Shown: positions 97 through 61,624, numbered from the stretch's first letter. The stretch is DNA of 64,000 bases from IMGVR_UViG_3300028592_000004:124001-188000, one strand, 5' to 3'. Notes: generated by a model from the letters alone, not told the origin. Made by a program: numbers and translations.

Positions 97-1967
97 ACCC
101 ACACCAGTCCTTTGACATCGTAGTAGTAGAAGGTCGAGTTATTCGTTCCGGTCGCAGACTCGCTGACGTAGTAGATTACATAACCCGTGCTGGGTGCGAG
201 TGGCAGCGCAAAGCCGTCTCCAACAGCGGCGGCAGCGCTATGGTCAATGACCAGGGCCGGCGTAGTCGACGTCGAGGTTCCGAGACCCAGACGAGCGCCC
301 TGAGTACCAGCACCGGACGGCAACATCGCGCCGACGAGCGACAACATTGGAGCTCGGGACGGGAAAGTGGATACCCACTCCAAAGTCGCTCCGCTGCCGT
401 TATTCCATCCGCGAATGGTCGTGGAGCTGTATGTGTGACTGTTCACATAGTCCGATCGAGCCAGCAACTTCGGCACAGGATTCAGCGCGTTCGACACGAA
501 CCGCTTTGTCACAGAGTCTTCGGTCGTGGTCGTGCTGGTCGTACGAATCGTACCGAGCAGGATGGCTTGATTCGCACTAACGACGTTTCCGCTGATCACG
601 CCGGTGATCTGGGACGCGTTGGTCTGTATACCGTGGAGCCATTCGATTGAAATGGCCCGGTCGGTATCGTTGGTCCACGCAACGTAGTCCAGGGTGAAGC
701 TACCGCTGTTCACGTAGCCGTAGACGTCGTAGTTCTTGCCGCTCGTCAGGCCGGTCAGCGTTCGGCCGATCTGCGAAAAGACGTATGGCACCCACATGGT
801 GCCGTTCCAGATGGTGACAAGGTTGCCGTTGTAGGGCGTGAAGAAGACGCTCGATGAGCCGGTGACGTCGCTCGTTGTGACGGGCACGCCGGTGGTCAGC
901 GTCAGCCGTCCGGACATCGGAACGTTGGCCGCGTATCCCGCCACGGTCGAGTTGTTGGCGAACAGCCAGCCGGTGAGATTCGTCGTTGTCGATGACGTCA
1001 CCTGGTTCGGACCAACGGCGCCCTGAGCACCCTGGTTTCCCTGGGTGCCTTGCGGACCTTGAGTTCCTTGCGGACCGGCAGCGCCTTGGGCTCCCTGGTT
1101 TCCCTGGGGACCCTGTGCTCCGGCTGCTCCCTGGTTGCCTTGCGGACCTTGTGCTCCAGCCGCACCCTGATTCCCCTGGGGACCCTGCGCCCCAGCGGCA
1201 CCCTGATTGCCCTGATTGCCTTGGGTGCCCTGATTCCCCTGCGGTCCCTGCGGGCCAGCGGGTCCCTGGGGACCGGTCGCACCTACGGCCCCGGGTTCAC
1301 CCTGTGGGCCAATATCGCCCTGGGGTCCGACATCACCCTGCGGGCCGGTGTTGCCGGTCGCACCGGTAGCACCTTGCGGTCCCTGCGGGCCGGCAGGTCC
1401 CTGTGGACCAACCATCGACACAACGACGGCGTCGTTCCAGTTGTAGTCGACCAGCTTGGGGCCGAACATTACGTTGAGGTCGGTCCGGATGTAGAAGTCG
1501 CCGGTCTTGCCGTACAACGCGTCGGGATCGCCTACGCCACTGAGAACCGTGTTGCCGTCAGCGCCGGCTGCCCCGTTGGATCCTGCAGCCCCCTGGGGTC
1601 CGGTCGCACCCTGCGGACCCTGAGCGCCCGTTCCGCCGGCCGCGCCGGCAGCTCCCTGAGGTCCCTGCGGACCCGTGGCCCCTTGCGGACCCGTGTCCCC
1701 ATCATCCCCGTCGTTGCCGGCCGGACCTTCCGGACCTTGTGCACCAGTGGCGCCCTGAGGACCCGCCCCGCCAGTAGCACCGGCGGCACCCTGGGCGCCT
1801 TGGGCTCCCTGCGCTCCCTGTGGCCCGGAGAGGCCTTCTGCGATCTTGGCTTCGATCGTGACCACCAGGTCACGCATCGACTGCGCCTTGATCCACTTTC
1901 GGGTGCCATCCTTGAAGATCCCGTCCGGACCCAGGAAGTCATCCCATTCGCGAATTGTGTCAGGCAT
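93..1967 (-). CDS. Collagen-like tail fibre / virion fibre protein
   Basis: Two long G-X-Y runs, then a Thr/Ser-rich beta-type C-terminal domain; lies distal to the baseplate genes. Confidence 0.8.
1005..1835 (-). repeat. Collagen (Gly-X-Y)n coding repeats
   Basis: [12 protein letters not shown] triplets incl. tandem [12 protein letters not shown] units; interrupted by a ~50-aa module (GNTVLSG...GDFYIRTD...FGPK). Confidence 0.9.
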
Positions 1968-1975
1968 CCTTGCCT
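1962..1975 (-). promoter_or_regulatory. CsrA/RsmA-type hairpin over the fibre start codon
   Basis: AGGC-AAGGAT-GCCT; loop overlaps the ATG. Confidence 0.55.
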
Positions 1976-1976
1976 C

Positions 1977-2924
1977 TCAACAGGAAACGCACCCCCGATC
2001 CCCGAGCGTGCTTGCCAAGATTGTATTCTCGAACTGAGAAACACGCCCACTTAGAGTGTTGACCAGGGTTTGTAGCGAGCGAGCCTGTTCGCCCAGCCTG
2101 TTGACGTCTTCAGTGATCTGTTCCAGGGTTGGACAGCCGCAGCACGGTTCCGCACAGCGATCTGTCAGTTTGAGCCCGTTCGTTGCAGGCTCCAGGTTGA
2201 GGCAGCCGACGCCGACGAGAGTGAACTCTCCTTCTGGTGTCGGCGGCACGTCATTGATGGTTCGAATCGGCGGTGCCTCGGCGTCGCTGTCGTCGCAGAT
2301 GCACTCGTTGTTGAGTCCCTCACCTTCGATTGCGTCCCACCGAATCCGGGTGGGCTGGTTCGTGACGACGATCGGCGTCAGTCGTGTGTTGTTGCCGGCG
2401 GCGAACTCCAAGTCCCCGTAGTACCGCGGCGATGTTTCGCTTCCATTCACCACGCGGAACGAGGAGATGCTCCGGATCATCGGCCGGATGCAGTCCTGGT
2501 CGAGGCAGGCTCCCTCAAAGGTGAACAGGTACTGCCCGGCCGGCAGCGCGTCGATCTCGTTCGTTTTCCCGATCGCGATCTTGCCGATCGTGTCTTCGAA
2601 GTCGCCGGTCCCGATAAGGGAGTAGCTGGCGTTCTCGGTGTGCGTGGAGCGTGGTACGGTGACCGAGGCAACAACCGGATTCGTCGCCCCGTCGTAGTAG
2701 GAGACCGTGATCCCATATCCGGTCCCGAAGAGCACGATCGAGCTGATGAAGAACTGATCTGGCTCGACGGCCAGTCCGGCGTGAACAGGCAGGTACAACG
2801 CCACGAGGAACGTGTTCGGGATCATGAAGTCCCCGGACGTGTCCAGACGCGTTGCGTGGCTGGCAATGGGATAGGGCCGGAGTCCATTGACGTCCGGCCA
2901 GCCAGCTCCCCAGTATCGGGCCAT
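1977..2924 (-). CDS. Putative baseplate/fibre-associated structural protein with Cys-rich C-terminus
   Basis: TAAGGAG RBS; position in tail module; CAEPCCGC motif followed by a predicted coiled coil. Confidence 0.55.
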   Translation of the reverse strand: MARYWGAGWPDVNGLRPYPIASHATRLDTSGDFMIPNTFLVALYLPVHAGLAVEPDQFFISSIVLFGTGYGITVSYYDGATNPVVASVTVPRSTHTENASYSLIGTGDFEDTIGKIAIGKTNEIDALPAGQYLFTFEGACLDQDCIRPMIRSISSFRVVNGSETSPRYYGDLEFAAGNNTRLTPIVVTNQPTRIRWDAIEGEGLNNECICDDSDAEAPPIRTINDVPPTPEGEFTLVGVGCLNLEPATNGLKLTDRCAEPCCGCPTLEQITEDVNRLGEQARSLQTLVNTLSGRVSQFENTILASTLGDRGCVSC

Positions 2925-2933
2925 GATGTCTCC

Positions 2934-4706
2934 TTACGAGCCCGAGATGATCAGGCGTCCGCGGATGATGCCGATCTCGCCCGCAAACGCGTCCAGCGAA
3001 GACCGCTCCACGGTGATGTAGACGGCATCGCCAGCCGCGACGGCGAAAGCCGCACTGTCTACGTCGAAGTAGGAATCGGCCGTGACGGCGATCTCGGTAT
3101 CGATCGTCATGGACGTGTCCGCGGTGGGCAGGGCGGTGGCCGTCGTTTCCCGAGGTAGCCGGCGATAGGCCGCAGCCAGCTCCGGGAACGTCCCTGCCGA
3201 CTTGGAAAGGCACGTCAGTCGCAGGATCGCCGTGGGCGTGTTGGGCAGCCCCGCACTCGGCACCGAGAACTGCATGCGGATGGCGGAGTCTCGCCCTGCG
3301 CGGAAGCCGATGAACGGAATGTCGTCGTCCGACCGTTCGACAGCGTCGCCCAACCGGGTGATCTGCGGATGCAGGTCCCGTGCGAAGGCGTCAAGATCGG
3401 CGTTGATCGTGACCGTCCCCTGATGCCCGCCGTTATTCGCGATCGGGTTCGTGGAGGAAAGGGTGATGTTGGCGCCGGCAACCAGCTTCTCAACGACCAA
3501 TCCGCGGCTGAACGTAACGCCGTCCAGGGACTTGAACACGGTAGCCCCGGACACGAGCGTGTTTGAGACCAGGAACTCCAGGTCCAGGTCGATGACCAGG
3601 GCACCCGTATCGGCCTCTTCACCGTCGCAGTTCAGGATCCGTAGCGGCGAGCCATCTGCCGCCTTCAGGCTCGTCACGACACTCCGACTCGTGGCGAAGG
3701 TCATGGTCGTGTAGACCAGGACCAACTTCATCTTCTCCGTTCGCGGGCATTCGATCGAGCCCAGGCTGCTCTCGGAGAGGCTTTCTCCACTGATGAAATC
3801 GGTCGGCCACGGTACATCCCCGTAGCAGTCGCTCATCCACCAGATTCCGTTCCGGTCCATAACGACCAGACCGTCGAGACCCTGGGGAACGAGCGTGCCG
3901 CCAACGCGGTCCGCGCCCTTGTCCCAGAAAAGGGCGGCACTTTCGACAGGGATCGGAGGCCAGATCCGGCTGAGCGCAGGGTGTGCGGCGAGGTTGTAGC
4001 CGAAGGCGGCTCCCGCCGGGGCGAGCCCGTTGAAGGAGTCGTCGCTGGCCGGCAGCCAGCCGGGGACCGCTTCGTCCGCGTTCGTGATTTCGTGCCGCTG
4101 CCCTTCGGCCGGCGGGGCGTGGTCGCCCGCGGGCTCCGCGACCAGCTCCACACGAAAGTGGATGTGGTCCTCCATGAAGTCCTTCAGCGTTGGAAGGACC
4201 GAGACCTGTCCGTTGCCCAGGTTGTAGGCGACAGGAACGGAAACCGCGGGTCGCTGCGGCGTCAGTTTCCCGGGCGTCTGCGTGGAGAGGTAGAGCCGGC
4301 CGGCAGTGTCCGGGTCATCGACCGTTGCTGAGAGATCGATGGCGCTGAGACCCAGCGCGACGATGTCCGCCAGCTGCGAATTGTGCTTTTTCCGGACGAT
4401 GCCGATCACGTCAGCGCTGGGGCTGATCACGAAGGCTCCGGTCTCTTCGTCCAGAACCGCCTGAGCCAACGCCAACTCGAACTGCTGCGTCTCGCTGTTG
4501 TAGTAGACCGCGGAGCCGATCAGTACGTCGGACTTGACCGTCTTCTCGTACAGAATGACGTTCTCGCCAAGCTCCGCAGCATCTTGCCGGTACCGCAAAT
4601 AGGCAGACCGGGACTCGTTATCCCGGTCCGGTCGACTGACAACGCTGGCATTGACCGCCTCGCCGTCCCGGACGTGGCGGACATTGCCCGGCCATGTGTT
4701 TGCCAT
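2934..4706 (-). CDS. Putative virion structural protein (baseplate periphery)
   Basis: 590-aa acidic, beta-rich ORF in the tail module; start taken at MANTW. Confidence 0.55.
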   Translation of the reverse strand: MANTWPGNVRHVRDGEAVNASVVSRPDRDNESRSAYLRYRQDAAELGENVILYEKTVKSDVLIGSAVYYNSETQQFELALAQAVLDEETGAFVISPSADVIGIVRKKHNSQLADIVALGLSAIDLSATVDDPDTAGRLYLSTQTPGKLTPQRPAVSVPVAYNLGNGQVSVLPTLKDFMEDHIHFRVELVAEPAGDHAPPAEGQRHEITNADEAVPGWLPASDDSFNGLAPAGAAFGYNLAAHPALSRIWPPIPVESAALFWDKGADRVGGTLVPQGLDGLVVMDRNGIWWMSDCYGDVPWPTDFISGESLSESSLGSIECPRTEKMKLVLVYTTMTFATSRSVVTSLKAADGSPLRILNCDGEEADTGALVIDLDLEFLVSNTLVSGATVFKSLDGVTFSRGLVVEKLVAGANITLSSTNPIANNGGHQGTVTINADLDAFARDLHPQITRLGDAVERSDDDIPFIGFRAGRDSAIRMQFSVPSAGLPNTPTAILRLTCLSKSAGTFPELAAAYRRLPRETTATALPTADTSMTIDTEIAVTADSYFDVDSAAFAVAAGDAVYITVERSSLDAFAGEIGIIRGRLIISGS

Positions 4707-4714
4707 CCTTGGCA
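4701..4714 (-). promoter_or_regulatory. CsrA/RsmA-type hairpin over a start codon
   Basis: TGCC-AAGGAT-GGCA; loop overlaps the ATG. Confidence 0.55.
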
Positions 4715-16406: not shown

Positions 16407-16863
16407 TCCTCTTCCTTCCTTGGTCGCGGGATGCGTCGTTGTCGACGAGCCACTGCGCCGTCTGCTCGATCTTTCGCTGGACCTCCGGATCTTCCGGGTC
16501 GCCCCAGGCGGCTACCCAGGCATCGTACAGCCGCTTGTTGGCGGATTCTTGAGCCTGATCCGGAGACTCGAATGTATTCCAAGGGAAAAGAAGCTGCAGT
16601 ATCTGCTGCAACAGACGGTAGGACTCCTGATTCAGCTTCTCGACCGATTCCTCGGTCAGATTGTCCCGGCTGAGCAGGTTTCCGTTGCGGCGATGCAACA
16701 GGTCGTACATGAAGAGTCGTTGAGCTCGGGACTTCTCCGAGATCATCAACGACACCCTCGTGTACCAGCGTCGGTCTTGGGGATCGGCTTTTGTGAAGTC
16801 CAGTGTGCCATCGGCGGCACACTGGCACATCAGAGCGGCTACACGATCCCCTGCCAAAAATCC
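16291..16863 (-). CDS. Tail assembly chaperone -1 frame extension (gpT-like)
   Basis: Open -1 frame entered at G GAT TTT near the end of the upstream gene; precedes tape measure. Confidence 0.6.
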   Translation of the reverse strand, partial: GFLAGDRVAALMCQCAADGTLDFTKADPQDRRWYTRVSLMISEKSRAQRLFMYDLLHRRNGNLLSRDNLTEESVEKLNQESYRLLQQILQLLFPWNTFESPDQAQESANKRLYDAWVAAWGDPEDPEVQRKIEQTAQWLVDNDASRDQGRKRNGRAAPAGDHGAVGGRANVRSGQRARDAVRPQHSGPPK

Positions 16864-21326: not shown

Positions 21327-21340
21327 TGACCTCCGTGTCA
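21327..21340 (-). promoter_or_regulatory. CsrA/RsmA-type hairpin at the tube RBS
   Basis: TGAC-ACGGAG-GTCA. Confidence 0.6.
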
Positions 21341-24211: not shown

Positions 24212-24227
24212 AATGCCTCCGTGCATT
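24212..24227 (-). promoter_or_regulatory. CsrA/RsmA-type hairpin at the sheath RBS
   Basis: AATGC-ACGGAG-GCATT. Confidence 0.6.
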
Positions 24228-24261
24228 GAATGTGAGATCCGTCTCAGCGGCAGTCTGTAAT

Positions 24262-24948: not shown

Positions 24949-25024
24949 CCATGCCTAGCGCTTGAAGCACGTCGCGCTGTGACGGGGCGTAGTCGAAAAG
25001 GCGGATCTTCCGCATCAGGAGCTT

Positions 25025-33866: not shown

Positions 33867-33924
33867 CGCTCGTGTCACTCCTTGACTTGTGCTTGGTCAG
33901 CATCCTGCGCCAGACCCACAGCGA

Positions 33925-37603: not shown

Positions 37604-38582
37604 CGGTGAGTTCCTCGTCCGTGAGGTCAGGGAGAGTTGCTTTTGGCTCGGGATAGGACCAGTCCTCTTCGCCGAGGGTCAGGACCGGTTTGTTTCCCGC
37701 TTGAAGTTGCATGGCTTCGTTGCCGTGCAGTTCGAATCGTTTTGTATCGTACTGCTGAAGGAGCGTCGGTTCTACGCCCGGCGCCGATGGAAGACGAGGG
37801 CCGGCCAACCACCGGACAGCCTTGAGGCATGCCTCGACGTTATCGCCCAGGCTCGTCGCGGGTCCGCCACCCCCCGCACCAGCCGCCTTTTCGACCGCCA
37901 GCAGCTTGGTGAACTGCTCGATGATCTCGGGGCTGTTGAAGTCGTTGATGCCCATTGTGTGGGCTGCAACGGCTGCTTTCCGGGTGATCGCTTTCGCCGC
38001 CAGATCCTGTACGAACTTCGACAGTTCGGACGGGGAGTTCGGACGCTGCGGGTCGACCTGCTGGTCGATCATCATGTCCAGAACAACGGGACCGCCGAAG
38101 TAGCCGAACACTTTCCACAGGAGCGGCCAGTCCGAGGGTCGCAGGTTGTCGTGGATCTGGGGACCAAGCACGCGGTGGAGGATGTAGCCGCGATTCTCAA
38201 TCCGCTCCGAAACGTTGAAGAAGACGGTCTCGTAGGCGAGGACCGTCTCCAGGGTGGCACAGCAGCGTCGAGCTGTGTTTTCGGTTGTGTCCTGAGCAAG
38301 AATCCGGGCTTCCAGTTCGTGCTTCAGAGCTTCGTAGTACTCGTCTGTCTGGTGGAAGATCTGGTGAGCCCAGAACAACCCCTCGTCATACAGCTCCAGC
38401 GCTGCAATCTGGCTGGGGACGGTGGCCTCCTCCAGACGACGTCGAAATTCAATGGCCCTGCGAACGTGTTTGTCATCCCGTCGCCGCGAGAACGGGACAC
38501 CATCCTCCAACACGTTCCTGGCCCGGTCCCAGCGCCAACTTGGTGAGCGCACGGGGTTCCGCGGCGAGAACTCGATCGACAT
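37578..38582 (-). CDS. Hypothetical protein, possibly HTH-containing
   Basis: 334-aa ORF overlapping the next gene; LEARILA...TA......ETV.AYE..FFNV resembles a helix-turn-helix. Confidence 0.55.
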   Translation of the reverse strand: MSIEFSPRNPVRSPSWRWDRARNVLEDGVPFSRRRDDKHVRRAIEFRRRLEEATVPSQIAALELYDEGLFWAHQIFHQTDEYYEALKHELEARILAQDTTENTARRCCATLETVLAYETVFFNVSERIENRGYILHRVLGPQIHDNLRPSDWPLLWKVFGYFGGPVVLDMMIDQQVDPQRPNSPSELSKFVQDLAAKAITRKAAVAAHTMGINDFNSPEIIEQFTKLLAVEKAAGAGGGGPATSLGDNVEACLKAVRWLAGPRLPSAPGVEPTLLQQYDTKRFELHGNEAMQLQAGNKPVLTLGEEDWSYPEPKATLPDLTDEELTDGANEQGS

Positions 38583-39024: not shown

Positions 39025-41484
39025 TTATCCTTCCGTGGACAGGCTCAGATCGATGCGCTGGTCGGGCACCGCCTGGATGGCCTTCTGCTTGAGGAACAGG
39101 ACCAGCTCACCCGTCTGGTCGAAGGTGCTGGAAAACGCATTCTCCAGCTCGTTCATTTCGTTTTCGCCGTACCGCTCCTGGAACTTTTCCGGGTTCCAGT
39201 AGAACACGAGCAGCAGCCGGCCAATCCGGTCCATCCCCTTCATAATCGGACCGATATGCCGGTCGACCAGCTGGTCGTCGCGGGTCGACTTGAGCAGCGT
39301 CGAGATGACGCTGGTGTCGAAGACTTCCCGCTGACCGCTCTGGGCAGCCTGCTGCACGTACTGCATCATGCCCGGTTCGGGACCCTGAAGCTGGTACGCG
39401 TCCCGCGAAGCCTGATGATTCGGCTCCATTGAGTCAACGGGAAGCATGTCGGCCTGGGAACCATAGGTCGGCATGTTGCCGCCCATGACCCCGTCGAACC
39501 GGGCGTCCATCGGCGGAATGGACGGGGCGGTGACCGTCTGCTCGACCCCGTACGGGTTGGCGTACTTGATGCGGAGGTTCAGACCGCGGTGATGCAGGTT
39601 GAAGGCGACATCGGCGCGCTTCACCAGCTCGCGGGCCGTCGCTTCGCGGAGGCCGTGGTTGACGATCAGGTCGAAGCAAGCCTGCTTGGCCGGCATTCGC
39701 TGGTTGTTGATGACCGCTTCGCAGCCATCGCACCAGATCTTGAGCTGACTGGCTTGCTTCATCATCTCGAACTGGACGTCGAGCAGGTTCCCCGGGCGGA
39801 TCGGCGGCGGATCGCTTTCGCCTGTGTCGGCGCCGGCCATGCACGGGCTACAGTCCTTGCCATACTGCTCTTCCCAGGACTTCCGGTGCCGGACCTTGAT
39901 GATCTTCGTGTCGTTGGGGACGGTGACATCGCCCTTGTTCGACCGGAAGGTGATTCCCTTCTTGTCCGACAGGTGCAGGCGTTCCCCATCGGTGTACTTG
40001 TCGTAGCCCTCATGATCGTCGTAGGGCATGCCGGAGTAGTTGCGGCCGAGATTGAAGGCCGGATCTTCCTTCGAGCAGTACGAGTCGAAGTTGACTTCCC
40101 ACGACTTGCCGGCATCGGACGTTCCGAGGGACCGATCAACGGTGAACGGGAGCGTGGCGCTCCCGGTTGCGTTGATGGCGATGTACTCGCTGCGATCGCT
40201 CGACTCAGGCGACGAATCGCTCTGCTCTTCGACCCACTTCTCGAATTCCGACTTCGGGTAGTACTTCGTCGTGTAGAGATAGGAGGCGTGGATGTTGAGC
40301 CAGTTACGCTCGCTGGCACCACTCCCCGCGCGGATCACGGTCGCGAACCGCTTCCGGCCGTTGCCACTCATCGGGTGGATGATGACGACGCACTTCTCGA
40401 CGGAGCCTGGCTTGACCAGGACGTCATACAGCCCGGTCTCGGTCGGGGTCTCGAACGTTTCCTTTTCGCGAACTTCGTAGACCTTGGAGATCTCGTCGTC
40501 GTCGCGGTCGTCCACGACGAGGGAGCCCTCCGCGGCCAACTTCTCCCGCTGCTCTTCGGTGAGCAGGAGGGACGGCTGGGCGAAGTTGTTGAAGCGGTGG
40601 ATCGAAACCGAGCCCCGCTTGACGAGCCCGTCCAGCAGCGACTTCGGGTTGCCGCTCTGGGATTCTGAGCGAACGACCTTCGGCGAGGGCGGCGCGGAGC
40701 CGGTGACCTTGTATTCGCAGCCGGCGGTCTTCATCGGCGACCGCGACTTCGCCTCTTCGAACATGTCGTAGAGGGAGTCGTGCGTGTACTTGTCCCGGAC
40801 CGGGAAGCGATCGACGGACTGCTTGATGTGCGCGAAGGCGTCAGCGAACTCCTCCGGCGCGTAGAACTTGTCGAGCTGGGACTGCAGATCCGGGAACTTG
40901 TCTGCCGCCATCTTCAGGAGATCAAGCATCTCCAGACCGCCATCCTTGAGCAGCTCGGGCAGATGGACCGTCCCGTCGAGCGGATTGGAGGTGGCGTGCT
41001 TGTAGAGGCAGCCCACGGCGTCGAGCGCCCAGGGCGGCATCGCCGAGCCGTACTTCGAGGGTGACTGGGTGAACTGCGACAGGGAGGGGCGCAGCGTCTG
41101 CCGCGAGGCCTCGCCCTTGTCGATCCCGTTGCCGAGGATGATCGGCTTCTTGTTCAGGATGTAGTTGATCCAGTTCTCTTTCAGCGGCACGAACATGTCC
41201 TGGTTCTTCAGGTACAGGAGTTCGTGCCCCTTCAGGTCCCCGTCGATGAAGAACACCGGAGCGTAGAGCCACTGGGAGCCGACCTTAAACGCGAAAATCC
41301 CGACAGCGCGGGTATCATCTTCGTTCCGGTCGATGAGCTGGAAGCCGACCTCGTAGTCGAGGAGCTTCGGGGCCTTGTCCGTCAAGTAGGAGTGGGCCAG
41401 CGACGAAAATGCCTGCTCGAACGGGACGTCGTTCCCGGCTTCCGAGGCCCGCTTGATGTTCCGAGGCGTCAAAGTTTGAGGCAT
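39025..41484 (-). CDS. Large head-module protein of unknown function
   Basis: 819 aa from MPQTLT; several K-x-A motifs between globular-looking blocks. Confidence 0.65.
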   Translation of the reverse strand: MPQTLTPRNIKRASEAGNDVPFEQAFSSLAHSYLTDKAPKLLDYEVGFQLIDRNEDDTRAVGIFAFKVGSQWLYAPVFFIDGDLKGHELLYLKNQDMFVPLKENWINYILNKKPIILGNGIDKGEASRQTLRPSLSQFTQSPSKYGSAMPPWALDAVGCLYKHATSNPLDGTVHLPELLKDGGLEMLDLLKMAADKFPDLQSQLDKFYAPEEFADAFAHIKQSVDRFPVRDKYTHDSLYDMFEEAKSRSPMKTAGCEYKVTGSAPPSPKVVRSESQSGNPKSLLDGLVKRGSVSIHRFNNFAQPSLLLTEEQREKLAAEGSLVVDDRDDDEISKVYEVREKETFETPTETGLYDVLVKPGSVEKCVVIIHPMSGNGRKRFATVIRAGSGASERNWLNIHASYLYTTKYYPKSEFEKWVEEQSDSSPESSDRSEYIAINATGSATLPFTVDRSLGTSDAGKSWEVNFDSYCSKEDPAFNLGRNYSGMPYDDHEGYDKYTDGERLHLSDKKGITFRSNKGDVTVPNDTKIIKVRHRKSWEEQYGKDCSPCMAGADTGESDPPPIRPGNLLDVQFEMMKQASQLKIWCDGCEAVINNQRMPAKQACFDLIVNHGLREATARELVKRADVAFNLHHRGLNLRIKYANPYGVEQTVTAPSIPPMDARFDGVMGGNMPTYGSQADMLPVDSMEPNHQASRDAYQLQGPEPGMMQYVQQAAQSGQREVFDTSVISTLLKSTRDDQLVDRHIGPIMKGMDRIGRLLLVFYWNPEKFQERYGENEMNELENAFSSTFDQTGELVLFLKQKAIQAVPDQRIDLSLSTEG

Positions 41485-44494: not shown

Positions 44495-44517
44495 CTCGGC
44501 TTCCTTGCCAGAAGTAA

Positions 44518-52139: not shown

Positions 52140-52153
52140 AGTCCTCCGTGACT
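52140..52153 (-). promoter_or_regulatory. CsrA/RsmA-type hairpin at RBS
   Basis: AGTC-ACGGAG-GACT. Confidence 0.6.
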
Positions 52154-53360: not shown

Positions 53361-54343
53361 GCGGCGAGACTCCATTTGAGGTGCTGCAGGGTGAAGCCCT
53401 TCGCGCCAGCACCGGTGTACGAATCGTTCTGCTTGAGCATGCGATCGACGGTCGCAAAGTCGACCGCGAAGCATCCTTCAGGCAGCTCCACTTCCTCTCC
53501 GCTTTCGCAGAAGATCTTGTTCGGGCCGATCGGCTGATTGCCCCAAGACTGCTGACAGACGAAAGCAGGCCGGTTTCCGCGGGCCAGGAAGTAACCCCGG
53601 AAGTACATGCAGTGATTCCACGTCCCGTTCGCATAGTCGAAGCCGTCGCGGTCCCGGAAGTTCCGGAAGCCGACGTTCGAGCAGACGGGGATACCACGCC
53701 AGTTGCAGATCGAGGCTCGCGCCTCCTCGGCTGAGCGAACCGGCGCGATGTAGGTGATCGGATGCTGCCGGGACTCTGTTTCCAGCTCCGCCGGAACACC
53801 GTTACGGCTCGTGCCCCAGGTCTGAGCGATGTTGTCGTCCGGCGTCCGCAGGTCGTACTGACCGTACTTCAGGCGGAAGACGACGCCCCACTGTCGGACC
53901 CACTCCGCCATCCAGGCCCCGTAGGAGCCCTGGTTCCCGCCGAGCCGGCCTTTCCCGATCTCGATCCGAGAGCCGGCGTAGAGCGGTTCGGTGGCCACAG
54001 GGGCAACCCAGCGCTCCAGGGAGCCGAACATGATCTGGATCAGGAACAGGTCCTGAGCGAAGCGGCCCCAGCCCTGCGAAACGCAGGTCCCCAGGGTCTG
54101 CTTGAAGGCCCGGAGCATTCGCCCCAGGACCTTCAGCTCAGCTCGCCACAGGAAGGTGTCCGGAAACGAAGCCGCCGCCATCATGGCGGGTGCAGCCTCG
54201 CGGAGGGACGGGAACCAGTTTGTGGCAGCGGCAGCAGTACGCCTGACCTCGCTCTGGTTGTTGATCCAGCCGAGGTTATCCGCCGTAAAGCCACGTGGGA
54301 GGGCGCGTGTTTGCTCACGCTTACCTCGACTACGAGCAGACAT
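53357..54343 (-). CDS. Papain-like (C1) cysteine peptidase
   Basis: Q..GTCVS (Cys), NHCM (His), QQSWG (canonical NSWG); no signal peptide. Confidence 0.8.
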   Translation of the reverse strand: MSARSRGKREQTRALPRGFTADNLGWINNQSEVRRTAAAATNWFPSLREAAPAMMAAASFPDTFLWRAELKVLGRMLRAFKQTLGTCVSQGWGRFAQDLFLIQIMFGSLERWVAPVATEPLYAGSRIEIGKGRLGGNQGSYGAWMAEWVRQWGVVFRLKYGQYDLRTPDDNIAQTWGTSRNGVPAELETESRQHPITYIAPVRSAEEARASICNWRGIPVCSNVGFRNFRDRDGFDYANGTWNHCMYFRGYFLARGNRPAFVCQQSWGNQPIGPNKIFCESGEEVELPEGCFAVDFATVDRMLKQNDSYTGAGAKGFTLQHLKWSLAA

Positions 54344-54356
54344 CCATGTCCTCCCG

Positions 54357-54833: not shown

Positions 54834-55179
54834 TCGACCCCTCCTTGGGTTCGTCGGTCGTTTGGCCCAGGGTCGTCACGACCACCTGGGTCACGGCCTG
54901 CGCGAAGGCAGGCGTGGATTCGCCGGACAGCACCAGGTCAACCTTACGGTCGCCGACCTGGAAGCTGAGCTTCGACTGCGGAACGCCACTCGATCCGCGG
55001 AGAAAGAGCTCCCGCGAGCCAAGGGCGCCGGCGCCGAGAAGCCCGGCAACGATCTGGGCAATGCTGTACCCGGACGTGAGGGGCACACCAGCGTTGGCCG
55101 CAGCGGTGAGGCCGTACGTGGCCTGGGCGGTGAGAGCCGTTCCCACGAGCGTGAGAACAGGCGCGAGGAATTTGAGCAT
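54811..55179 (-). CDS. Small membrane protein (holin-like candidate)
   Basis: Two hydrophobic segments and a hydrophilic C-terminus; 122 aa. Confidence 0.5.
   Translation of the reverse strand: MLKFLAPVLTLVGTALTAQATYGLTAAANAGVPLTSGYSIAQIVAGLLGAGALGSRELFLRGSSGVPQSKLSFQVGDRKVDLVLSGESTPAFAQAVTQVVVTTLGQTTDEPKEGSNVAKAAR
54837..54850 (-). promoter_or_regulatory. CsrA/RsmA-type hairpin at RBS
   Basis: ACCC-AAGGAG-GGGT. Confidence 0.6.
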
Positions 55180-55220
55180 GAGAGGCTCCGAGAACAGTCC
55201 GTTGTCGTCGGGTTGCTGGC

Positions 55221-57157: not shown

Positions 57158-59512
57158 TCAGTCGAAGGCGGCGCTGATGGCACCGGTCAACAACCCGCCC
57201 CAGAGGCCCGCTTGCTGCAGGCCCACCTGGGCCTCGGGATTGAGGCCCGCTAGGGCTCCCATTGTTTTACCCAGAAGCAACCCACCGAGAAATCCCCCAG
57301 CCCCGCTGAAGGCAACGGTCTTGGCGATGTCGAAAGGCGAAACGGAGGGCTTTCCACCGCTCCCCAGCGAGGCGGCGACGAGCGTACCGCTCGCGGCTGC
57401 AGCGACTTGCGCTGGCGTGCCACCGAAGTTCGAGCCGGGCCGTGCGGCGTCATTCCAGATCACACTCCCGAAGGCGTCGACGGGGATATTCGACAGGAAC
57501 ATTGTCCCCGTCATGTCCTCCGCGGCGTTGGTTTTCGTCCGACCGGACCAGCCGAAGTCGTCGGCCGGCATCTCGGAACCCATCCCAGACAGGTTCGAGT
57601 TCCACCCGTGCGGCGTCTTGAGACCCCAGTACAAACCCGGAGCAGCGCCCAGGCCGGCGCCCAGGAGCCCCAGCGTGCGTCGCATCCGCTTGCCGGAGAA
57701 GTACTGCTCCGGAAGCATGTTGTCCATCAGATAGCCGGCACCGTAGCCCAGGCCGGCTCCCAGAGCTCCACCAACCAGCGTGCTGGAGAGCGGGCTCGGC
57801 CCACCGAGCGGCTTGTTGACCTTCGACCACATGTCCGAAATCCCCTCGAACATCGCGCCCTGCTTGAACATCGTCCAGCCCGGCTCGTCGGCCGGGATCG
57901 TACTGACCAGGCCCTTCTCCGGATGGACGAACCAGCAGCCCTCTGCCTCCGCATACTTCACGACCAGCGGCGCCGCCTGCTCGTACAGAGCTCGCACCCG
58001 GGCGGGGACTTCCCGCCAACTGAGGTGTTCCAGCTCGTCGATCGCGCTCGCTTCCTTCTGGTTGCGCTGTCCGATCTCCTTCAACAGATCCCGGAACTTC
58101 ATGTTGATCTCTTCCTTCTGCTCGGCCAGACGCCGCAGGTGATAGTCCGCTCCAGACCGATCATCGGTCAGGCCGAGGAACCGTTCCAGAGAGGATGGCT
58201 CCCGAGGGCGGGACAGGAAGTTCTGGATGAGGACGTTCCGCTGGTCTGTCGGAAGGTAGCCGTGACTATCGTGACGGATCCCGCGGCCTTTGACCTGAGT
58301 ATCGCGAGCCTCGTTCCAGTGCGGATCCAGGATCTGCATCAGCCGAGTGCCACGGAGCGAGATCCCTTCCGAGCCGGCGGGACCGGCGAGCAGCACCGGA
58401 GCCAACCCGTTGTTGTAGCTCTCAATAATCCGCTTCCGCTCCAGGTCGGCGATACCGCCGTGGAAGAGGCCGTAGGGGATCTTGTCTCGCTCCAGGGCCG
58501 CGGCGTAGGGACGGAGGCCGGCGTCAATGAAGTTCGAGTAGACGAGCGCTCGGCTCTTCGGGTTCTTCGCCATCTGCTCCTTGAGGAGCTTATAGGCCAG
58601 CTGCAGCTTGGGCGAGGAATCGAACGCGGCCAACGGGTCCGGGTTCGACATGAACGGGAACATCGACAGCCCGATCTGTCGCGGTCCGGTCAGGAAGGAC
58701 GTCATCCGCTTCCGTTCGAGGGCGGAGAGCGGGAAGTTGTTCTGCAGCTTGTAGCGCAGGACCCAGGGGATCGAGTTCCAGAACGACCGATACGCGGTCG
58801 TCTGCTCGTCCGACATGTCAACTTCGTGCATCTCGTCTGTGCGATCCACGAGCGGCTTATCGGGAGCGTGGTAGTCGACGTGGCCCGCCAGCAGATCTTC
58901 CAGCCGGCCGACGTTCTTCGGCTCCATCACCTGGCCGGGCGTGACACCGAACAACGAGGCGAAGAAACCCGGGCGAACCGTCTTCTGCTTGATGAACTGG
59001 TGTGTGAACGCGTCCGGCGTGATCCGCTCGCCGGTCAGGATCGACATCGGCGCCGCGAGATCGGACGGGTGATTGACGATCGGCGAGCCCGAGAGGAGGT
59101 AAACGTGCTTGGCCTTGTTCGCCAGGTCCGTCACTGCCTGCGTCCGCTGAGACTCAGGGTTCCGGATCCGGTGAGCCTCATCGACGATCAGAGTGTCCGC
59201 GGCCGGGGCCTTGCCCGCCGTCGCGCCCTCGTAGGACACAACGTTGCCCATCAGCGAGCCGTCAGTGAACTTGGCCTGCTCCTTCGCAAAGTTGGGACGC
59301 AGTGCCGCTGGCACGATAGCCGTGTACGGCTTGCCGGCGTTCTCTGCCGCAGCGATCGAGGCCAGAGTCTTCCCGCTCCCCACGTCGTGGAAGAGGAGCA
59401 TGCGGGACTCTTCGTCCTTCCCGGTCTGGGCGATCCGCTTCTGTTGAGGCTGCAGCTCGACGCCCGGCAGGAGGGCCGCGATCTTCAACTGGTCAACGAA
59501 GTCGGCGTCCAT
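57158..59512 (-). CDS. SF2 (SNF2-like) helicase/translocase fused to a C-terminal glycine-zipper region
   Basis: GSGKT, DEAH, SGSP, EGISL, Q..GRGIR; C-terminal GGALGAGLGYGAG and similar segments. Confidence 0.85.
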   Translation of the reverse strand: MDADFVDQLKIAALLPGVELQPQQKRIAQTGKDEESRMLLFHDVGSGKTLASIAAAENAGKPYTAIVPAALRPNFAKEQAKFTDGSLMGNVVSYEGATAGKAPAADTLIVDEAHRIRNPESQRTQAVTDLANKAKHVYLLSGSPIVNHPSDLAAPMSILTGERITPDAFTHQFIKQKTVRPGFFASLFGVTPGQVMEPKNVGRLEDLLAGHVDYHAPDKPLVDRTDEMHEVDMSDEQTTAYRSFWNSIPWVLRYKLQNNFPLSALERKRMTSFLTGPRQIGLSMFPFMSNPDPLAAFDSSPKLQLAYKLLKEQMAKNPKSRALVYSNFIDAGLRPYAAALERDKIPYGLFHGGIADLERKRIIESYNNGLAPVLLAGPAGSEGISLRGTRLMQILDPHWNEARDTQVKGRGIRHDSHGYLPTDQRNVLIQNFLSRPREPSSLERFLGLTDDRSGADYHLRRLAEQKEEINMKFRDLLKEIGQRNQKEASAIDELEHLSWREVPARVRALYEQAAPLVVKYAEAEGCWFVHPEKGLVSTIPADEPGWTMFKQGAMFEGISDMWSKVNKPLGGPSPLSSTLVGGALGAGLGYGAGYLMDNMLPEQYFSGKRMRRTLGLLGAGLGAAPGLYWGLKTPHGWNSNLSGMGSEMPADDFGWSGRTKTNAAEDMTGTMFLSNIPVDAFGSVIWNDAARPGSNFGGTPAQVAAAASGTLVAASLGSGGKPSVSPFDIAKTVAFSGAGGFLGGLLLGKTMGALAGLNPEAQVGLQQAGLWGGLLTGAISAAFD

Positions 59513-60189
59513 GCCAGCACCCTCTCCAGCTCCATCAGAGGCTTGGCCGAGGACGTTTTCTCCGCGGCCCAAATGCAACTCGGACAGTCGTGGTCGACGA
59601 CGTGCCGCTCATTGTGGGAGCAGCGACACCGGGTCTCGTGCCCGCACTTATGTTGAAAGATCCCGTGCGCTGACGCTGCCTTCGCGACGTCGCTGTTCTC
59701 CTGCAGGATCTTCTTCTTCCGGACCGCGCAGGTGATGTGGAAATCGTACTCGTTGTTCTTGGGGCGTGCTGACAGCCCGTATGACTTGCGAAGTTTCTCC
59801 AGATCCGGAGACTTCACTTTCAGGAACCAGACCCGCGACATTTCCTTCCAGCTCGTTGGCGCGACCTCTTGCAGCGCCCCAAGCTGGTAGTGGAACTCCC
59901 TTCCCCGCTCGACGATGACGTCGATGCCGCCAATCTGCTCGATCTCTTCCGGACGCATGACGCTGATATGCGCATTCAGCGGTTCATTGTTGTGTGGCCC
60001 GGGCAATTCTGCGCCAAGGACCCGCATCGCCGAGAAGACACCCCTGACTAGATCATTCGGGACTGTCAGCAACAGCCATCCACTCTGAGACGCAATCAGC
60101 CGGCCCGCCAAAACGGGGGCATCGACCGCGTCACCCGCGGACTTCAAGAGGTAGCCGGACGCTTCGCCTAGTTGAAAGTCTGACGTCAC
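59485..60189 (-). CDS. 2H phosphoesterase family protein with C-terminal Cys/His cluster
   Basis: Two HxS/T motifs (AHISV, FHITC) about 80 aa apart; GTG start after GAGGA. Confidence 0.75.
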   Translation of the reverse strand: MTSDFQLGEASGYLLKSAGDAVDAPVLAGRLIASQSGWLLLTVPNDLVRGVFSAMRVLGAELPGPHNNEPLNAHISVMRPEEIEQIGGIDVIVERGREFHYQLGALQEVAPTSWKEMSRVWFLKVKSPDLEKLRKSYGLSARPKNNEYDFHITCAVRKKKILQENSDVAKAASAHGIFQHKCGHETRCRCSHNERHVVDHDCPSCIWAAEKTSSAKPLMELERVLAWTPTSLTS

Positions 60190-60430: not shown

Positions 60431-60434
60431 GTCA

Positions 60435-60809
60435 CTACTCATCTTCATTGAGATTGGGGACTTCCAGGAAAACACGGCTGACGGATTCAAATGTGATCCG
60501 GATCCAGGTTGGGGTCAGATCTTCGAGGACTTGTGTTCGGTGTTCGACCAACCTGTACACGCAGCGCTCAACTGCGTTGTACAGGTTGTCCTCGGACCGA
60601 ATTGCCTGCAGTCGGTTGACAACTGGGCTCAAACGTCGCATCAATCCCAGAAAGATCTTCTGCAGACGCCTGCCTTCGAGGTCCGACTCGATGGCAAGGC
60701 GGGACAGAGGCTCTCCGCGCTCAACGCATTCCATCACCGCCGCGGTGATGGACATTGCCAACGTTTGCCAGATCAGCCATTCCTGGGTGATCGGCAGCTT
60801 CCTAGCCAT
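60435..60809 (-). CDS. Hypothetical protein
   Basis: Start MARKLP overlaps the caspase stop; 124 aa. Confidence 0.5.
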   Translation of the reverse strand: MARKLPITQEWLIWQTLAMSITAAVMECVERGEPLSRLAIESDLEGRRLQKIFLGLMRRLSPVVNRLQAIRSEDNLYNAVERCVYRLVEHRTQVLEDLTPTWIRITFESVSRVFLEVPNLNEDE

Positions 60810-61605
60810 TGGAGAAGACTTCCCACAGCTGTGCGTACTTCGGTCCCGAGAGGACCGGAGTCTGCGGGCACTCATCACTCGGCAGGTGATTTCGGACGAG
60901 ACGGAACAGATCCCGGTAGGTCGCCTGCGGAGGCAGCTTCGGGATCAGCTGCTGCAGGTAGTACGAGAAGGCACCCTTCGGGCGCCCGTCGAACTCCGTG
61001 TCGAAGGCGAACTCCTTGTCGCTGCAAGCGGACATGCAGACGACCCCCTGCGTCATCCACGCCAGGGGCATGTGCTCTTGCTTGAGGGCGGTATCGATCG
61101 ACTTCTGCAGCCCCTTGAACTGCGGCAGATCGTACGGAGGCAGGAAGCGTTTCTTCACCCGCTTGCCGGGCTTCTTCTTCGGAGCGGACCGCATGACCGT
61201 TCCGGAGTGGCAGCTGTCGGCGATCAGAGCTACCCGAGCTTCCGGCTTGCGGTTCTGGTCGAACAGGAGGTACAGCTCATCGTCCAGAATCAGCTCGTTG
61301 TCGAGGTCGTAGGGGCACCAGGCTTCGTCTCGACCGTCGATCTCATCGCCATCCAAGTCGGGCACCCAGGTCCCGTGGCCGGCGAAGGTGATGATGGCCA
61401 ACTCGTTCGGCCCGGTGGCCTGCAGGAGTTCCGTCAGACCCTTCAGGATGTTGGCGCGGGTGGCCTCCTTTTCGAGCAGAACGTTCTGAACCTGGACACC
61501 TCGCTCGACAAGCAGGGTGGCCCAGTCCTGAGCGTCGTTGACAGCCCCGTAGAGCTCCATCTCCGAGTTGGCGTAGTTGATGCCGATGCACAGTGCACGC
61601 TTCAT
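60802..61605 (-). CDS. Metacaspase / caspase-family (C14) peptidase
   Basis: KRALCIGINY, L.G.VND, FAGHG (His), DSCHSG (Cys), GAFS, QTP. Confidence 0.92.
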   Translation of the reverse strand: MKRALCIGINYANSEMELYGAVNDAQDWATLLVERGVQVQNVLLEKEATRANILKGLTELLQATGPNELAIITFAGHGTWVPDLDGDEIDGRDEAWCPYDLDNELILDDELYLLFDQNRKPEARVALIADSCHSGTVMRSAPKKKPGKRVKKRFLPPYDLPQFKGLQKSIDTALKQEHMPLAWMTQGVVCMSACSDKEFAFDTEFDGRPKGAFSYYLQQLIPKLPPQATYRDLFRLVRNHLPSDECPQTPVLSGPKYAQLWEVFSNG

Positions 61606-61606
61606 G

Positions 61607-61624
61607 ACGTTCCTCCTTGAACGT
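61607..61624 (-). promoter_or_regulatory. CsrA/RsmA-type hairpin at the caspase RBS
   Basis: ACGTTC-AAGGAG-GAACGT. Confidence 0.65.

What the first reader, a model, noticed from the sequence alone, without database searches (positions are those of the whole stretch)
1962..61624. Window-wide regulon of CsrA/RsmA-type hairpins on late-gene translation starts
Seen: many start regions (minus strand) fold into a stem closed by C-G around an ANGGAN hexaloop. Stem sequences differ from gene to gene yet stay paired. Fibre AGGC-AAGGAT-GCCT (1962); TGCC-AAGGAT-GGCA (4701); tape measure CC-AAGGAA-GG (16414); tube TGAC-ACGGAG-GTCA (21327); sheath AATGC-ACGGAG-GCATT (24212); GGC-ATGGAT-GCC (24944); neck TC-AGGGAC-GA (25899); MCP CACAC-ACGGAG-GTGTG (31334); decoration CAC-ACGGAG-GTG (31990); TGTCC-ACGGAA-GGATA (39026); CC-ACGGAT-GG (41490); GGC-AAGGAA-GCC (44498); GC-ATGGAT-GC (50056); trypsin AGTC-ACGGAG-GACT (52140); papain GGAC-ATGGAT-GTCT (54338); ACCC-AAGGAG-GGGT (54837); AC-ATGGAC-GT (55711); helicase GGC-ATGGAC-GCC (59504); caspase ACGTTC-AAGGAG-GAACGT (61607). 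Penta/tetraloop variants: GTCA-AGGAG-TGAC (33874), CTCA-AGGAA-TGAG (55726), AGCAA-AGGA-TTGCT (51220). Established: (A/U)CANGGANG(U/A) in a hexaloop over the RBS is the CsrA/RsmA/RsmE repression site. Several loops (ATGGAT, AAGGAT, ATGGAC) sit on the AUG itself, so they are not merely Shine-Dalgarno sequences. Inference: virion and lysis genes are held translationally silent by a host or phage CsrA until released, acting as a post-transcriptional late switch. No csrA gene is visible in this window.
Basis: partly seen in the sequence, partly recalled or inferred. Interest (0 to 1): 0.92.

Follow-up and report, generated by a model that had tools for sequence, protein, structure and literature searches.

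The report
Phage start-site GGA hairpins plus phage CsrA
About a third of the genes in this stretch of a 229-kb soil phage start with a small RNA hairpin showing the sequence A-N-G-G-A-N in its loop, the known docking site of the CsrA translation regulator. The same phage carries its own csrA gene 33 kb away, so it may use CsrA to control translation of its own virion proteins, which has not been described for any phage.

Summary
All 22 quoted strings are on the minus (sense) strand at the stated places. Among GGA triplets within -22..+4 of gene starts, 17 of 74 (17 of 55 genes) sit in an NN-GGA-N hexaloop closed by at least 3 Watson-Crick pairs. The rate is 2.4% for 1,415 interior GGAs (P=4e-11), and a flank-swap null expects 1.7. 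No other loop register stands out independently. Selecting only on GGA and stem gives loop base 1 = A in 17/17 and a C-G closing pair in 15/17, which is CANGGANG, the RsmE/CsrA site. Orthologous major capsid, decoration, sheath and tube leaders in relatives (56-82% identity) keep the hairpin with different stems (covariation 0.65 against 0.19 shuffled). Controls show no enrichment: 747 genes of the probable host clade (Planctomycetaceae), 75 other csrA-carrying viral contigs, and Pseudomonas phage F116. Walking the source contig (229 kb) found a 63-aa CsrA homologue (PF02599, E=2e-15; best solved match RsmE) about 33 kb from the window. The best reading is binding sites for a CsrA-family protein, probably the phage's own, that occlude the Shine-Dalgarno sequence or AUG. 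Binding, the direction of regulation and the "late switch" are untested. Sites also occur on non-virion genes.

The parts
31334..31349 (-). Major capsid protein leader hairpin CACAC-ACGGAG-GTGTG; GGA at -16 from the ATG at 31326
   Evidence: Capsid assignment. Kept in L005; stem changed with compensation in L006 (AAGCAC/GTGCTT) and L306 (ATC/GAT).
31990..32001 (-). A second hairpin, AACA-CGGAC-TGTT, lies upstream at 32011-32023.
   Evidence: Orthologues: L005 AACAC/GTGTT, L306 TCAC/GTGA.
24212..24227 (-). Tail sheath leader hairpin AATGC-ACGGAG-GCATT; GGA at -13 from the ATG at 24207
   Evidence: PHROG tail sheath. Orthologues: L305 TCGC-AAGGAG-GCGA, L306 AGC-ATGGAG-GCT.
24233..24246 (-). Second hexaloop hairpin on the sheath leader, TGAG-ACGGAT-CTCA, 20 nt upstream of the first
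   Evidence: Tandem pairs: 9 observed against 3.7 expected (P=0.013).
21327..21340 (-). Leader hairpin TGAC-ACGGAG-GTCA of the 170-aa gene after the sheath (tube, assigned by position only)
   Evidence: Orthologues: L305 GCC-AAGGAG-GGC, L306 GGTGAC-ACGGAG-GTCACC.
61607..61624 (-). Caspase-like (Peptidase_C14) gene leader hairpin ACGTTC-AAGGAG-GAACGT, the longest stem at 6 bp. A second hairpin, GAG-ATGGAG-CTC, lies at 61552-61563.
52140..52153 (-). Trypsin-like peptidase gene leader hairpin AGTC-ACGGAG-GACT
54837..54850 (-). Leader hairpin ACCC-AAGGAG-GGGT of a 158-aa gene
37613..37626 (-). A second hairpin, AGC-AAGGAA-GCT, lies at 37580-37591, just inside the gene.
39028..39039 (-). Hairpin TCC-ACGGAA-GGA (5 pairs if G-U is allowed, 39026-41) on the 137-aa gene leader
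44498..44509 (-). Hairpin GGC-AAGGAA-GCC on the 266-aa gene leader
55194..55205 (-).
1962..1975 (-). Hairpin AGGC-AAGGAT-GCCT on a tail-fibre-like gene. The start codon is formed by loop bases 5-6 plus the closing G.
4701..4714 (-). Hairpin TGCC-AAGGAT-GGCA on a tail-fibre-like gene. The start codon is formed by loop bases 5-6 plus the closing G, and the 5' arm overlaps the GAGGTG Shine-Dalgarno sequence.
24944..24955 (-). Hairpin GGC-ATGGAT-GCC. It lies on my start (24948), but the pipeline gene call starts at 24864, so the start is ambiguous.
54339..54350 (-). Hairpin GAC-ATGGAT-GTC on the start of the 328-aa gene.
59504..59515 (-). Hairpin GGC-ATGGAC-GCC with the AUG of the SNF2 helicase as loop bases 1-3
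62473..62484 (-).
16414..16423 (-). Weak candidate with a 2-bp stem only (CC-AAGGAA-GG). The sites at 25899-25908, 41490-41499, 50056-50065 and 55711-55720 are of the same class.
   Evidence: A 2-bp stem is near chance: 9.5% near starts against 4.8% interior.
33874..33886 (-). Pentaloop variant GTCA-AGGAG-TGAC. Similar variants lie at 55726-55738 (CTCA-AGGAA-TGAG) and 51220-51233 (AGCAA-AGGA-TTGCT).
   Evidence: These registers are not clearly enriched.

Best explanation
The hairpins are RNA operators for a CsrA-family protein. The most likely ligand is the 63-aa CsrA encoded by the same phage genome, about 33 kb beyond the low-coordinate end of the window, among DNA-metabolism genes.

Each operator shows A-N-G-G-A-N in a hexaloop on a 3-6 bp stem, usually closed by C-G. 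The loop lies in one of three places:
- on the Shine-Dalgarno GGAG, with GGA at -10..-17;
- on GGAUG, where the start codon is loop bases 5-6 plus the closing G;
- on AUGGAY, where the start codon is loop bases 1-3.

A bound CsrA dimer would cover the ribosome-binding site and set the rate or timing of translation of about 25 phage genes. These are concentrated on virion genes: capsid, the gene before it, sheath, tube and two fibre-like genes.

Shown here: the hairpins, their register and consensus, their selective maintenance in relatives, and the csrA gene with RNA-contact positions matching RsmE.

Inferred: binding, repression as the direction of the effect, and a timing role (CsrA made early or middle, then titrated as late mRNAs accumulate).
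For: - Register-specific enrichment at starts: 17/74 against 2.4%, P=4e-11. The flank-swap null gives 1.7 against 17 observed.
- Consensus found without using CsrA knowledge: loop base 1 = A in 17/17 against 25/57 non-hairpin near-start GGAs (P=1e-5). The closing pair is C-G in 15/17 against 9/34 chance hairpins (P=5e-5). Loop positions 2 and 6 are free. This is CANGGANG.
- Loops that lie on the AUG cannot be Shine-Dalgarno sequences, yet they are enriched too (6 against 1.2, P=4e-4).
- Orthologous leaders in relatives keep the pairing with different stem sequences: 5 of 6 pairs show double changes, and the covariation score is 0.652 against 0.194 shuffled (0/500) and 0.04-0.13 for slid registers.
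- The same genome has csrA: PF02599 E=1.9e-15, 57 bits against a cut-off of 27. The best solved match is RsmE (2jpp), with MLVLSRK, RIGVNAP and the R44-equivalent arginine aligned. It lies on contig IMGVR_UViG_3300028592_000004.
- The hairpin is not a general feature. Host-clade genes give 2.4% against 1.9%, 75 other csrA+ viral contigs give 2.0% against 1.8%, and csrA+ phage F116 at the same GC content gives 2/56.
- Many stems are marginal alone (-0.3 to -3 kcal/mol). That fits a protein-clamped hairpin better than a self-standing structure.
- Five leaders carry two hexaloop hairpins 15-58 nt apart. Tandem pairs number 9 against 3.7 expected (P=0.013).
Against: - There is no binding or expression data of any kind.
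- A broader second-site test was negative or ambiguous.
- No CsrB/Rsm-type sponge RNA or FliW was found in 67% of the genome, so nothing is known that would relieve repression.
- Some relatives (L007/L008 at 68% capsid identity, L002 at 54%) lack the hairpins. I could not test whether they also lack csrA.
- The csrA neighbourhood itself has no such hairpins, and the csrA leader has GGA motifs but no canonical hairpin.
- Constitutive repression of the most needed virion proteins is not obviously useful.
- In local folding, 8 of 23 hairpins have a closing-pair probability below 0.4. For the capsid leader a shifted tetraloop register competes.
Confidence: 0.6

Rival explanations
1. The sites are CsrA sites, but the working ligand is the host's CsrA (Planctomycetaceae carry csrA genes). 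The phage's own CsrA acts mainly on host mRNAs or competes with the host protein. The phage leaders then either sense host physiology or soak up host CsrA.
For: - The probable host clade has PF02599 genes; two turned up in 1.1 Mb of sampled host loci.
- The published view is that phage csrA genes manipulate the host (PMC11879866, PMC7366521).
Against: - Host-clade genes show no matching hairpin class at their starts.
- The host assignment rests on one host-like gene.
- A phage that carries both the sites and the protein is most simply read as a closed circuit.
Confidence: 0.15
2. The hairpins act in cis without any protein. They hold the Shine-Dalgarno sequence or the AUG in an open loop, so that GC-rich polycistronic mRNA cannot bury it. 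They would raise translation or protect the mRNA.
For: - The strongest stems sit on the genes expected to be most expressed: capsid, sheath and tube.
- GGA is predicted unpaired with high probability in most leaders.
Against: - This does not explain the invariant A at loop position 1, the C-G closing pair, or ACGGAG (the commonest loop, where C does not match the anti-Shine-Dalgarno sequence).
- It does not explain why only one register is used.
- 3-bp stems near 0 kcal/mol would present little.
- Other phages at 63% GC, and the host clade, do not do this.
Confidence: 0.15
3. The hairpins are targets of a different phage RNA-binding protein or nuclease. Examples are a RegB-like endoribonuclease that cuts GGAG in Shine-Dalgarno sequences, or a RegA- or coat-protein-like translational repressor.
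For: Phages are known to use such operators (T4 RegA and RegB, gp32, gp43; the MS2 coat-protein operator; review PMC3014915). Most proteins of this phage have no assigned function.
Against: - Only about 40% of the loops (7 of 17) end in GGAG; the rest are GGAU, GGAC or GGAA, so a GGAG cutter does not fit.
- The consensus matches CsrA position by position, and a CsrA gene is present.
Confidence: 0.07
4. The pattern is chance or a by-product of strong Shine-Dalgarno sequences in a GC-rich genome.
For: GGA is expected at starts, and 2-bp 'stems' are common by chance.
Against: The flank-swap null, the interior and antisense controls, the register specificity, covariation in relatives and three outside control sets all reject it.
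Confidence: 0.01

Closest known systems
RsmE/CsrA binding site (A/U)CANGGANG(U/A), as in the RsmE-hcnA complex (PDB 2jpp) and the stem-loops of RsmZ and CsrB
   Same: GGA in an A-N-G-G-A-N hexaloop, a C-G closing pair, a short stem, and overlap with the Shine-Dalgarno sequence. hcnA has loop ACGGAU; here ACGGAG is the commonest loop.
   Different: The sites sit on a phage's own genes, many of them virion genes. About a third lie on the start codon itself. No binding data exist.
csrA genes carried by phages and plasmids (about 1.2% of phage genomes, PMC7366521; csrA homologue PTXU04_00028 of phage PTXU04, where knockdown gives small plaques, PMC11879866; two CsrA-like genes in Pseudomonas phage F116)
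   Same: A small PF02599 protein encoded by a phage.
   Different: No target set on the phage's own mRNAs is reported in the papers I searched. F116 and 75 other csrA+ viral contigs show no such hairpins. This CsrA has almost no close relatives: 2 hits at 56-58% identity among 5.8 billion proteins.
B. subtilis CsrA on the hag mRNA (two sites, one over the Shine-Dalgarno sequence; relieved by FliW)
   Same: Repression of a highly expressed structural-protein gene through GGA hairpins at the ribosome-binding site. The N-terminus MLVLSRK is the same as in the Bacillus-type protein.
   Different: No FliW was seen in the 67% of the genome read. There are many targets rather than one.
Phage translational operators: T4 RegA, gp32 and gp43, RegB cleavage at GGAG, and the MS2 coat-protein hairpin on the replicase start
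   Same: A phage-encoded protein acting on start-site RNA elements of phage genes to order expression.
   Different: The protein family and the RNA motif are different. RegB needs GGAG, and MS2 has a single operator.

Membership tests
CsrA/RsmA/RsmE RNA binding site | GGA core exposed in the loop of a short hairpin | tested here: met
   17 window sites with GGA at loop positions 3-5 and stems of 3-6 bp. Only this register is independently enriched.
CsrA/RsmA/RsmE RNA binding site | A at loop position 1 and a C-G closing pair (CANGGANG), with positions 2 and 6 free | tested here: met
   A in 17/17 and C-G in 15/17, against 44% and 26% in controls. Positions 2 and 6 vary. In relatives the closing pair is C-G in 14/15.
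CsrA/RsmA/RsmE RNA binding site | The site overlaps the Shine-Dalgarno sequence or the start codon of the regulated gene | tested here: met
   GGA lies at -10..-17 or -21 (11 sites), at -2 (4 sites) or at +2 (2 sites) from starts.
CsrA/RsmA/RsmE RNA binding site | Two or more GGA sites per target, spaced so that one dimer can bridge them | tested here: inconclusive
   Tandem hexaloop pairs number 9 against 3.7 expected (P=0.013), five of them at starts. GGA counts and a broader hairpin test show no excess.
CsrA/RsmA/RsmE RNA binding site | A CsrA-family protein is present in the same system | tested here: met
   Phage csrA at L223 15592-15783, on the same contig as the window. The probable host clade also has csrA.
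CsrA/RsmA/RsmE RNA binding site | Direct, GGA-dependent binding and an effect on translation | not testable with these tools
   Needs gel-shift or toeprint assays and reporters.
Csr/Rsm system | An antagonist: a multi-GGA sponge RNA (CsrB/RsmY/RsmZ type) or FliW | tested here: not met
   No Rfam hit and no GGA-dense non-coding stretch in 148-154 kb, and no FliW among the listed Pfam hits (gene tables). One third of the genome was not read.
CsrA protein family (PF02599) | Pfam score above the gathering threshold, with the beta1 and beta5 RNA-contact positions kept (L2, L4, R6, R44 in E. coli numbering) | tested here: met
   57 bits against 27. The alignment to RsmE 2jpp shows MLVLSRK, RIGVNAP and W-R-D-E-L in place of H-R-E-E-I.
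T4 RegB target | GGAG tetranucleotide at the cleavage site | tested here: not met
   Only about 40% of the loops (7 of 17) contain GGAG; the rest are GGAU, GGAC or GGAA.

The most novel reading that the evidence does not exclude
A jumbo phage, probably of Planctomycetes, runs a self-contained Csr circuit. Its own divergent CsrA binds about 25 hexaloop operators on its own mRNAs. That gates or meters translation of the capsid, sheath, tube and fibre proteins as a post-transcriptional layer of the phage developmental programme. This would be the first defined function and target set for a phage-encoded CsrA.
Probability: 0.4. Interest if true: 0.85.

Novelty: new variant of a known kind. Interest (0 to 1): 0.78.

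Why it matters
csrA genes are scattered through phages and plasmids, but what they do for the element is unknown. The only functional datum I found is a small-plaque knockdown phenotype (PMC11879866). Here a phage carries both the protein and a statistically clear, evolutionarily maintained set of matching RNA sites on its own structural genes. That turns "what is phage CsrA for?" into a directly testable question: one 63-aa protein, short RNA oligos and reporter fusions. If confirmed, it adds a CsrA-based translational tier to phage gene timing. It would also show that the CANGGANG recognition code holds in a very divergent CsrA from a phage of a poorly studied phylum.

Tried and rejected
- Near-DNA search of the phage collection found no match.
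- Rfam on the window and on 125 kb of flanks found only tRNAs.
- Scans for csrA in viral contigs with E. coli CsrA and with Planctomycete CsrA queries did not list this contig. The peptide patterns of the second did not fit this protein. Gene-by-gene walking found the gene.
- I tried to test whether the hairpin-free 188-kb relative lacks csrA, using its neighbours (a 408-aa protein and ThyX). Only the phage itself was returned.
- A search for close CsrA orthologues found only two fragments at 56-58% identity.
- A search for a GGA-rich sponge in non-coding gaps found none.
- Second-site tests by GGA count and by a broad hairpin definition showed no clear excess.
- The idea that the hairpin is a general trait of GC-rich starts, of the host clade or of csrA+ phages was rejected.
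- An operator for a DNA-binding dimer was considered and rejected by inference. The arms vary while the asymmetric spacer is conserved, the motif is always on the sense strand, and some stems use G-U pairs.
- The 'in MFE' flag was unreliable, so I used pair probabilities instead.
- One repeat finder failed on strand syntax and was not repeated.

Full report
**1. What the window is**

The window is 63% GC, and all ~55 genes I called lie on the minus strand. It has no near-DNA match among deposited phages.

Gene content:
- The 308-aa protein at 30403-31326 is a distant major capsid protein (29% identity to Salmonella phage Arash; PHROG major head protein).
- The 928-aa protein at 21424-24207 is a tail sheath.
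- Pfam and PHROG also find pieces of a multisubunit RNA polymerase, baseplate and fibre proteins, an SNF2 helicase, a caspase-like peptidase and a trypsin-like peptidase.
- There is no CsrA in the window.

The window is positions 124001-188000 of a 229,210-bp viral contig, IMGVR_UViG_3300028592_000004. The same genome is also assembled as ENA ERZ27256794 k141_4608642. It is a jumbo phage from a metagenome.

**2. Check of the observation**

All 22 quoted strings are on the minus strand at the stated coordinates.

I chose starts by Shine-Dalgarno match, start codon and distance to the upstream stop, without looking at hairpins. These starts agree with the pipeline gene calls attached to the public contigs for 15 of the 16 hairpin genes those calls cover. 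The exception is 24948 against 24864.

Counts for GGA triplets with an NN-GGA-N hexaloop closed by at least 3 Watson-Crick pairs:

| Set | With hairpin | Total | Share |
|---|---|---|---|
| Near starts (-22..+4) | 17 | 74 | 23% |
| Interior, sense strand | 34 | 1415 | 2.4% |
| Antisense strand | – | – | 2.6% |

- Fisher P is 4e-11 for stems of at least 3 bp. For stems of at least 4 bp it is 9/74 against 6/1415 (4e-9).
- In a scan of 28 loop registers, only this one is independently raised. Two others are raised because they re-read the same hairpins one pair in or out.
- Swapping 3' flanks among start sites keeps the composition of start regions. It gives a mean of 1.7 such hairpins, with a maximum of 8 in 20,000 shuffles.
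- The subset lying on the start codon is enriched on its own: 6 against 1.2, P=4e-4.
- CANGGANG occurs 51 times on the sense strand and 14 times on the antisense strand. The 20 copies near starts carry stems of up to 6 bp. The 31 others almost all have only the closing pair.

- 14 of the 19 hexaloop sites are solid.
- Five have 2-bp stems and are weak.
- Three real sites were missed.
- The three penta- and tetraloop variants are not individually supported.

**3. Anatomy**

I selected sites on GGA plus stem only:
- Loop base 1 is A in 17/17, against 25/57 for near-start GGAs without a stem (P=1e-5).
- The closing pair is C-G in 15/17, against 9/34 for chance hairpins inside genes (P=5e-5).
- Loop position 2 is C, A or U, and position 6 is any base.
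- The consensus is therefore C-A-N-G-G-A-N-G flanked by complementary arms that differ from gene to gene.

There are three placements:
- GGA at -10..-17, where the loop carries the Shine-Dalgarno GGAG. This covers capsid, the gene before it, sheath, tube, the caspase-like and trypsin-like genes and others.
- GGAUG, where the AUG is loop bases 5-6 plus the closing G (1962, 4701, 24944, 54339).
- AUGGAY, where the AUG is loop bases 1-3 (59504, 62473).

Stabilities of the isolated hairpins run from +1.1 to -5.6 kcal/mol. In a 90-nt context the closing pair has probability of at least 0.4 in 15 of 23 genome-wide sites.

Five leaders carry two hexaloop hairpins 15-58 nt apart. The sheath leader is one example: TGAG-ACGGAT-CTCA, then AATGC-ACGGAG-GCATT. 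Tandem pairs number 9 against 3.7 expected (P=0.013). Broader second-site tests were not significant.

**4. Relatives**

Capsid and tube homologues led to related contigs.

Relatives that keep the hairpins:

| Relative | Identity to window | Hairpins seen |
|---|---|---|
| L005 | 82% (capsid) | Capsid hairpin kept; the upstream gene has AACAC/GTGTT |
| L006 | 70% (capsid) | AAGCAC-ACGGAG-GTGCTT, two compensatory pairs |
| L305 | 62% (tube) | Sheath TCGC-AAGGAG-GCGA, tube GCC-AAGGAG-GGC, and two more |
| L306 | 56% (tube) | 5 of 15 genes: TCAC/GTGA, ATC/GAT, GGTC/GACC, AGC/GCT, GGTGAC/GTCACC |

I aligned 15 orthologous leaders on the loop:
- 76.7% of cells pair, against 51.9% in shuffles.
- 5 of 6 pairs show changes on both sides.
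- The covariation score is 0.652, against 0.194 in shuffles (0 of 500 reach it) and 0.04-0.13 for slid registers.

Other relatives have plain Shine-Dalgarno sequences: L007/L008 (68%), L002/L011 (54%, a 188-kb contig) and more distant ones. The feature therefore belongs to part of this phage group.

**5. Controls outside the phage**

| Control set | Near starts | Interior |
|---|---|---|
| 747 genes from 77 loci of the probable host clade | 2.4% | 1.9% |
| 75 other csrA-carrying viral contigs, 1,775 genes | 2.0% | 1.8% |
| Pseudomonas phage F116 (63% GC, csrA+), deposited annotation | 2/56 (3.6%), neither canonical | 2.1% |

The window differs from each control at P between 2e-3 and 3e-12.

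**6. The rest of the genome**

Gene-by-gene walking recovered 154 kb (67%) of the genome.
- The 46 kb upstream, made of small, early-looking genes, has 6 hairpin genes of 61.
- The 38 kb downstream has 2 of 39.
- The window has 17 of 55 (window against the rest, P=4e-4).

At L223 15592-15783 lies a 63-aa gene that matches PF02599 CsrA at 57 bits (cut-off 27, E=1.9e-15). JGI names it "carbon storage regulator CsrA". A scan with it returns the window's own contig at about 91040-91228, which is ~33 kb from the window.

Its best solved relative is RsmE (2jpp), the protein whose RNA complex defines the CANGGANG site. MLVLSRK, RIGVNAP and the arginine equivalent to R44 are aligned.

It sits among ligase, ThyX, dCTP deaminase, RNase H and sugar-kinase genes, which suggests early or middle expression. 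That last point is inference.

No Rfam Csr/Rsm RNA, GGA-dense non-coding stretch or FliW was seen in what I could read.

**7. Host**

A phage gene with a prepilin N-methyl motif plus DUF1559 finds relatives at 40-59% identity in genome contigs, nearly all of them Planctomycetota and mostly Planctomycetaceae such as Schlesneria and Planctomicrobium. Two of those host loci carry PF02599 genes. The probable host phylum therefore has CsrA too. The host assignment rests on this one gene.

**8. Interpretation**

The variable arms, the conserved asymmetric loop, the fixed sense-strand orientation, some G-U pairs and the covariation together indicate a selected RNA structure.

Its consensus matches the CsrA/RsmE site position by position. 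That includes features a ribosome-binding site does not need: A at loop position 1, C at position 2, the C-G closing pair, and loops on the AUG.

With a csrA gene in the same genome, the best-supported reading is a phage Csr circuit acting on phage translation starts (confidence about 0.6 for binding by a CsrA-family protein).

Repression is the default expectation because the site covers the Shine-Dalgarno sequence or the AUG. However, the direction, the timing and the release mechanism are inferred only.

Rivals, weighed in the report sections, are host CsrA as the ligand, protein-free presentation hairpins, another RNA-binding protein or nuclease, and chance.

**9. Novelty**

Reviews and screens report csrA in about 1.2% of phages with no known role for the phage (PMC7366521). 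One knockdown phenotype has been reported (PMC11879866). I found no report of CsrA sites on a phage's own structural genes. This is a new variant of a known system. It is not yet a demonstrated mechanism.

Noticed in passing
L099 1659-3284 (= L100 11325-12950); L100 11045-11182: The phage encodes a Ro60/TROVE + vWA protein. Just upstream lies a 138-nt stretch with a weak tRNA-like Rfam hit (31.9 bits), possibly a YrlA-type Y RNA partner.
   Followed up: no
L099 7929-9400; L102 5994-6068: A cluster of 7 tRNA genes (Phe, Trp, Tyr, Leu-CAG, Ser-GCT, Glu, Gln). There is also a separate 75-nt tRNA with anticodon TCA (ARAGORN labels it 'SeC'), possibly an opal suppressor.
   Followed up: no
L101 5676-6845: A phage gene with a prepilin N-methyl motif and DUF1559 (SBP_bac_10), a family typical of Planctomycetes. 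Its relatives are nearly all in Planctomycetota genome bins, and it was used here as the host hint.
   Followed up: partly
window 39028-48966 (minus strand): Large proteins with Rpb1- and Rpb2-type domains: the phage has its own multisubunit RNA polymerase. One window protein has a weak Sigma70 region 3 hit.
   Followed up: no
window 31350-31362 and 32002-32012; L005 and L306 capsid and upstream-gene leaders: A C/A-rich stretch (CAACAA-like) directly precedes the hairpin on the capsid leader and on the leader of the gene before it. It is kept in relatives. It could be a promoter or start element, or an unstructured translation enhancer.
   Followed up: no
window 21381-21403 and 21344-21363 (minus strand): Between sheath and tube lie a terminator-like hairpin CCCGGCGGG-AAGAT-CCCGCCGGG followed by TTT, and then a 7-bp hairpin CGCAAGT/ACTTGCG just before the tube hairpin.
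   Followed up: no
L305 positions 5, 5250, 5314, 10483, 18884, 18917: The related phage contig carries six copies of the perfect 18-nt palindrome TTCAATAACGTTATTGAA in intergenic spaces. It is absent from the window and may be an operator or terminator motif of that relative.
   Followed up: no
L308 (Pseudomonas phage F116) 16229-16600 and 33363-33569: F116 has two CsrA-like genes, one of them inside its structural gene cluster, yet shows no GGA-hexaloop enrichment at its starts.
   Followed up: partly
L156 10001-12223: In one Planctomycetaceae bin a csrA gene lies about 1 kb from a DUF1559 gene. Two csrA genes in 1.1 Mb of sampled loci hints at several csrA copies per genome in this clade.
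   Followed up: no
window 20810-21319: Homologues of the tube protein are 10-18 residues shorter at the N-terminus and align to only ~89% of it. The true start may therefore lie downstream of 21319, which would lengthen the spacing between the hairpin and the start.
   Followed up: no
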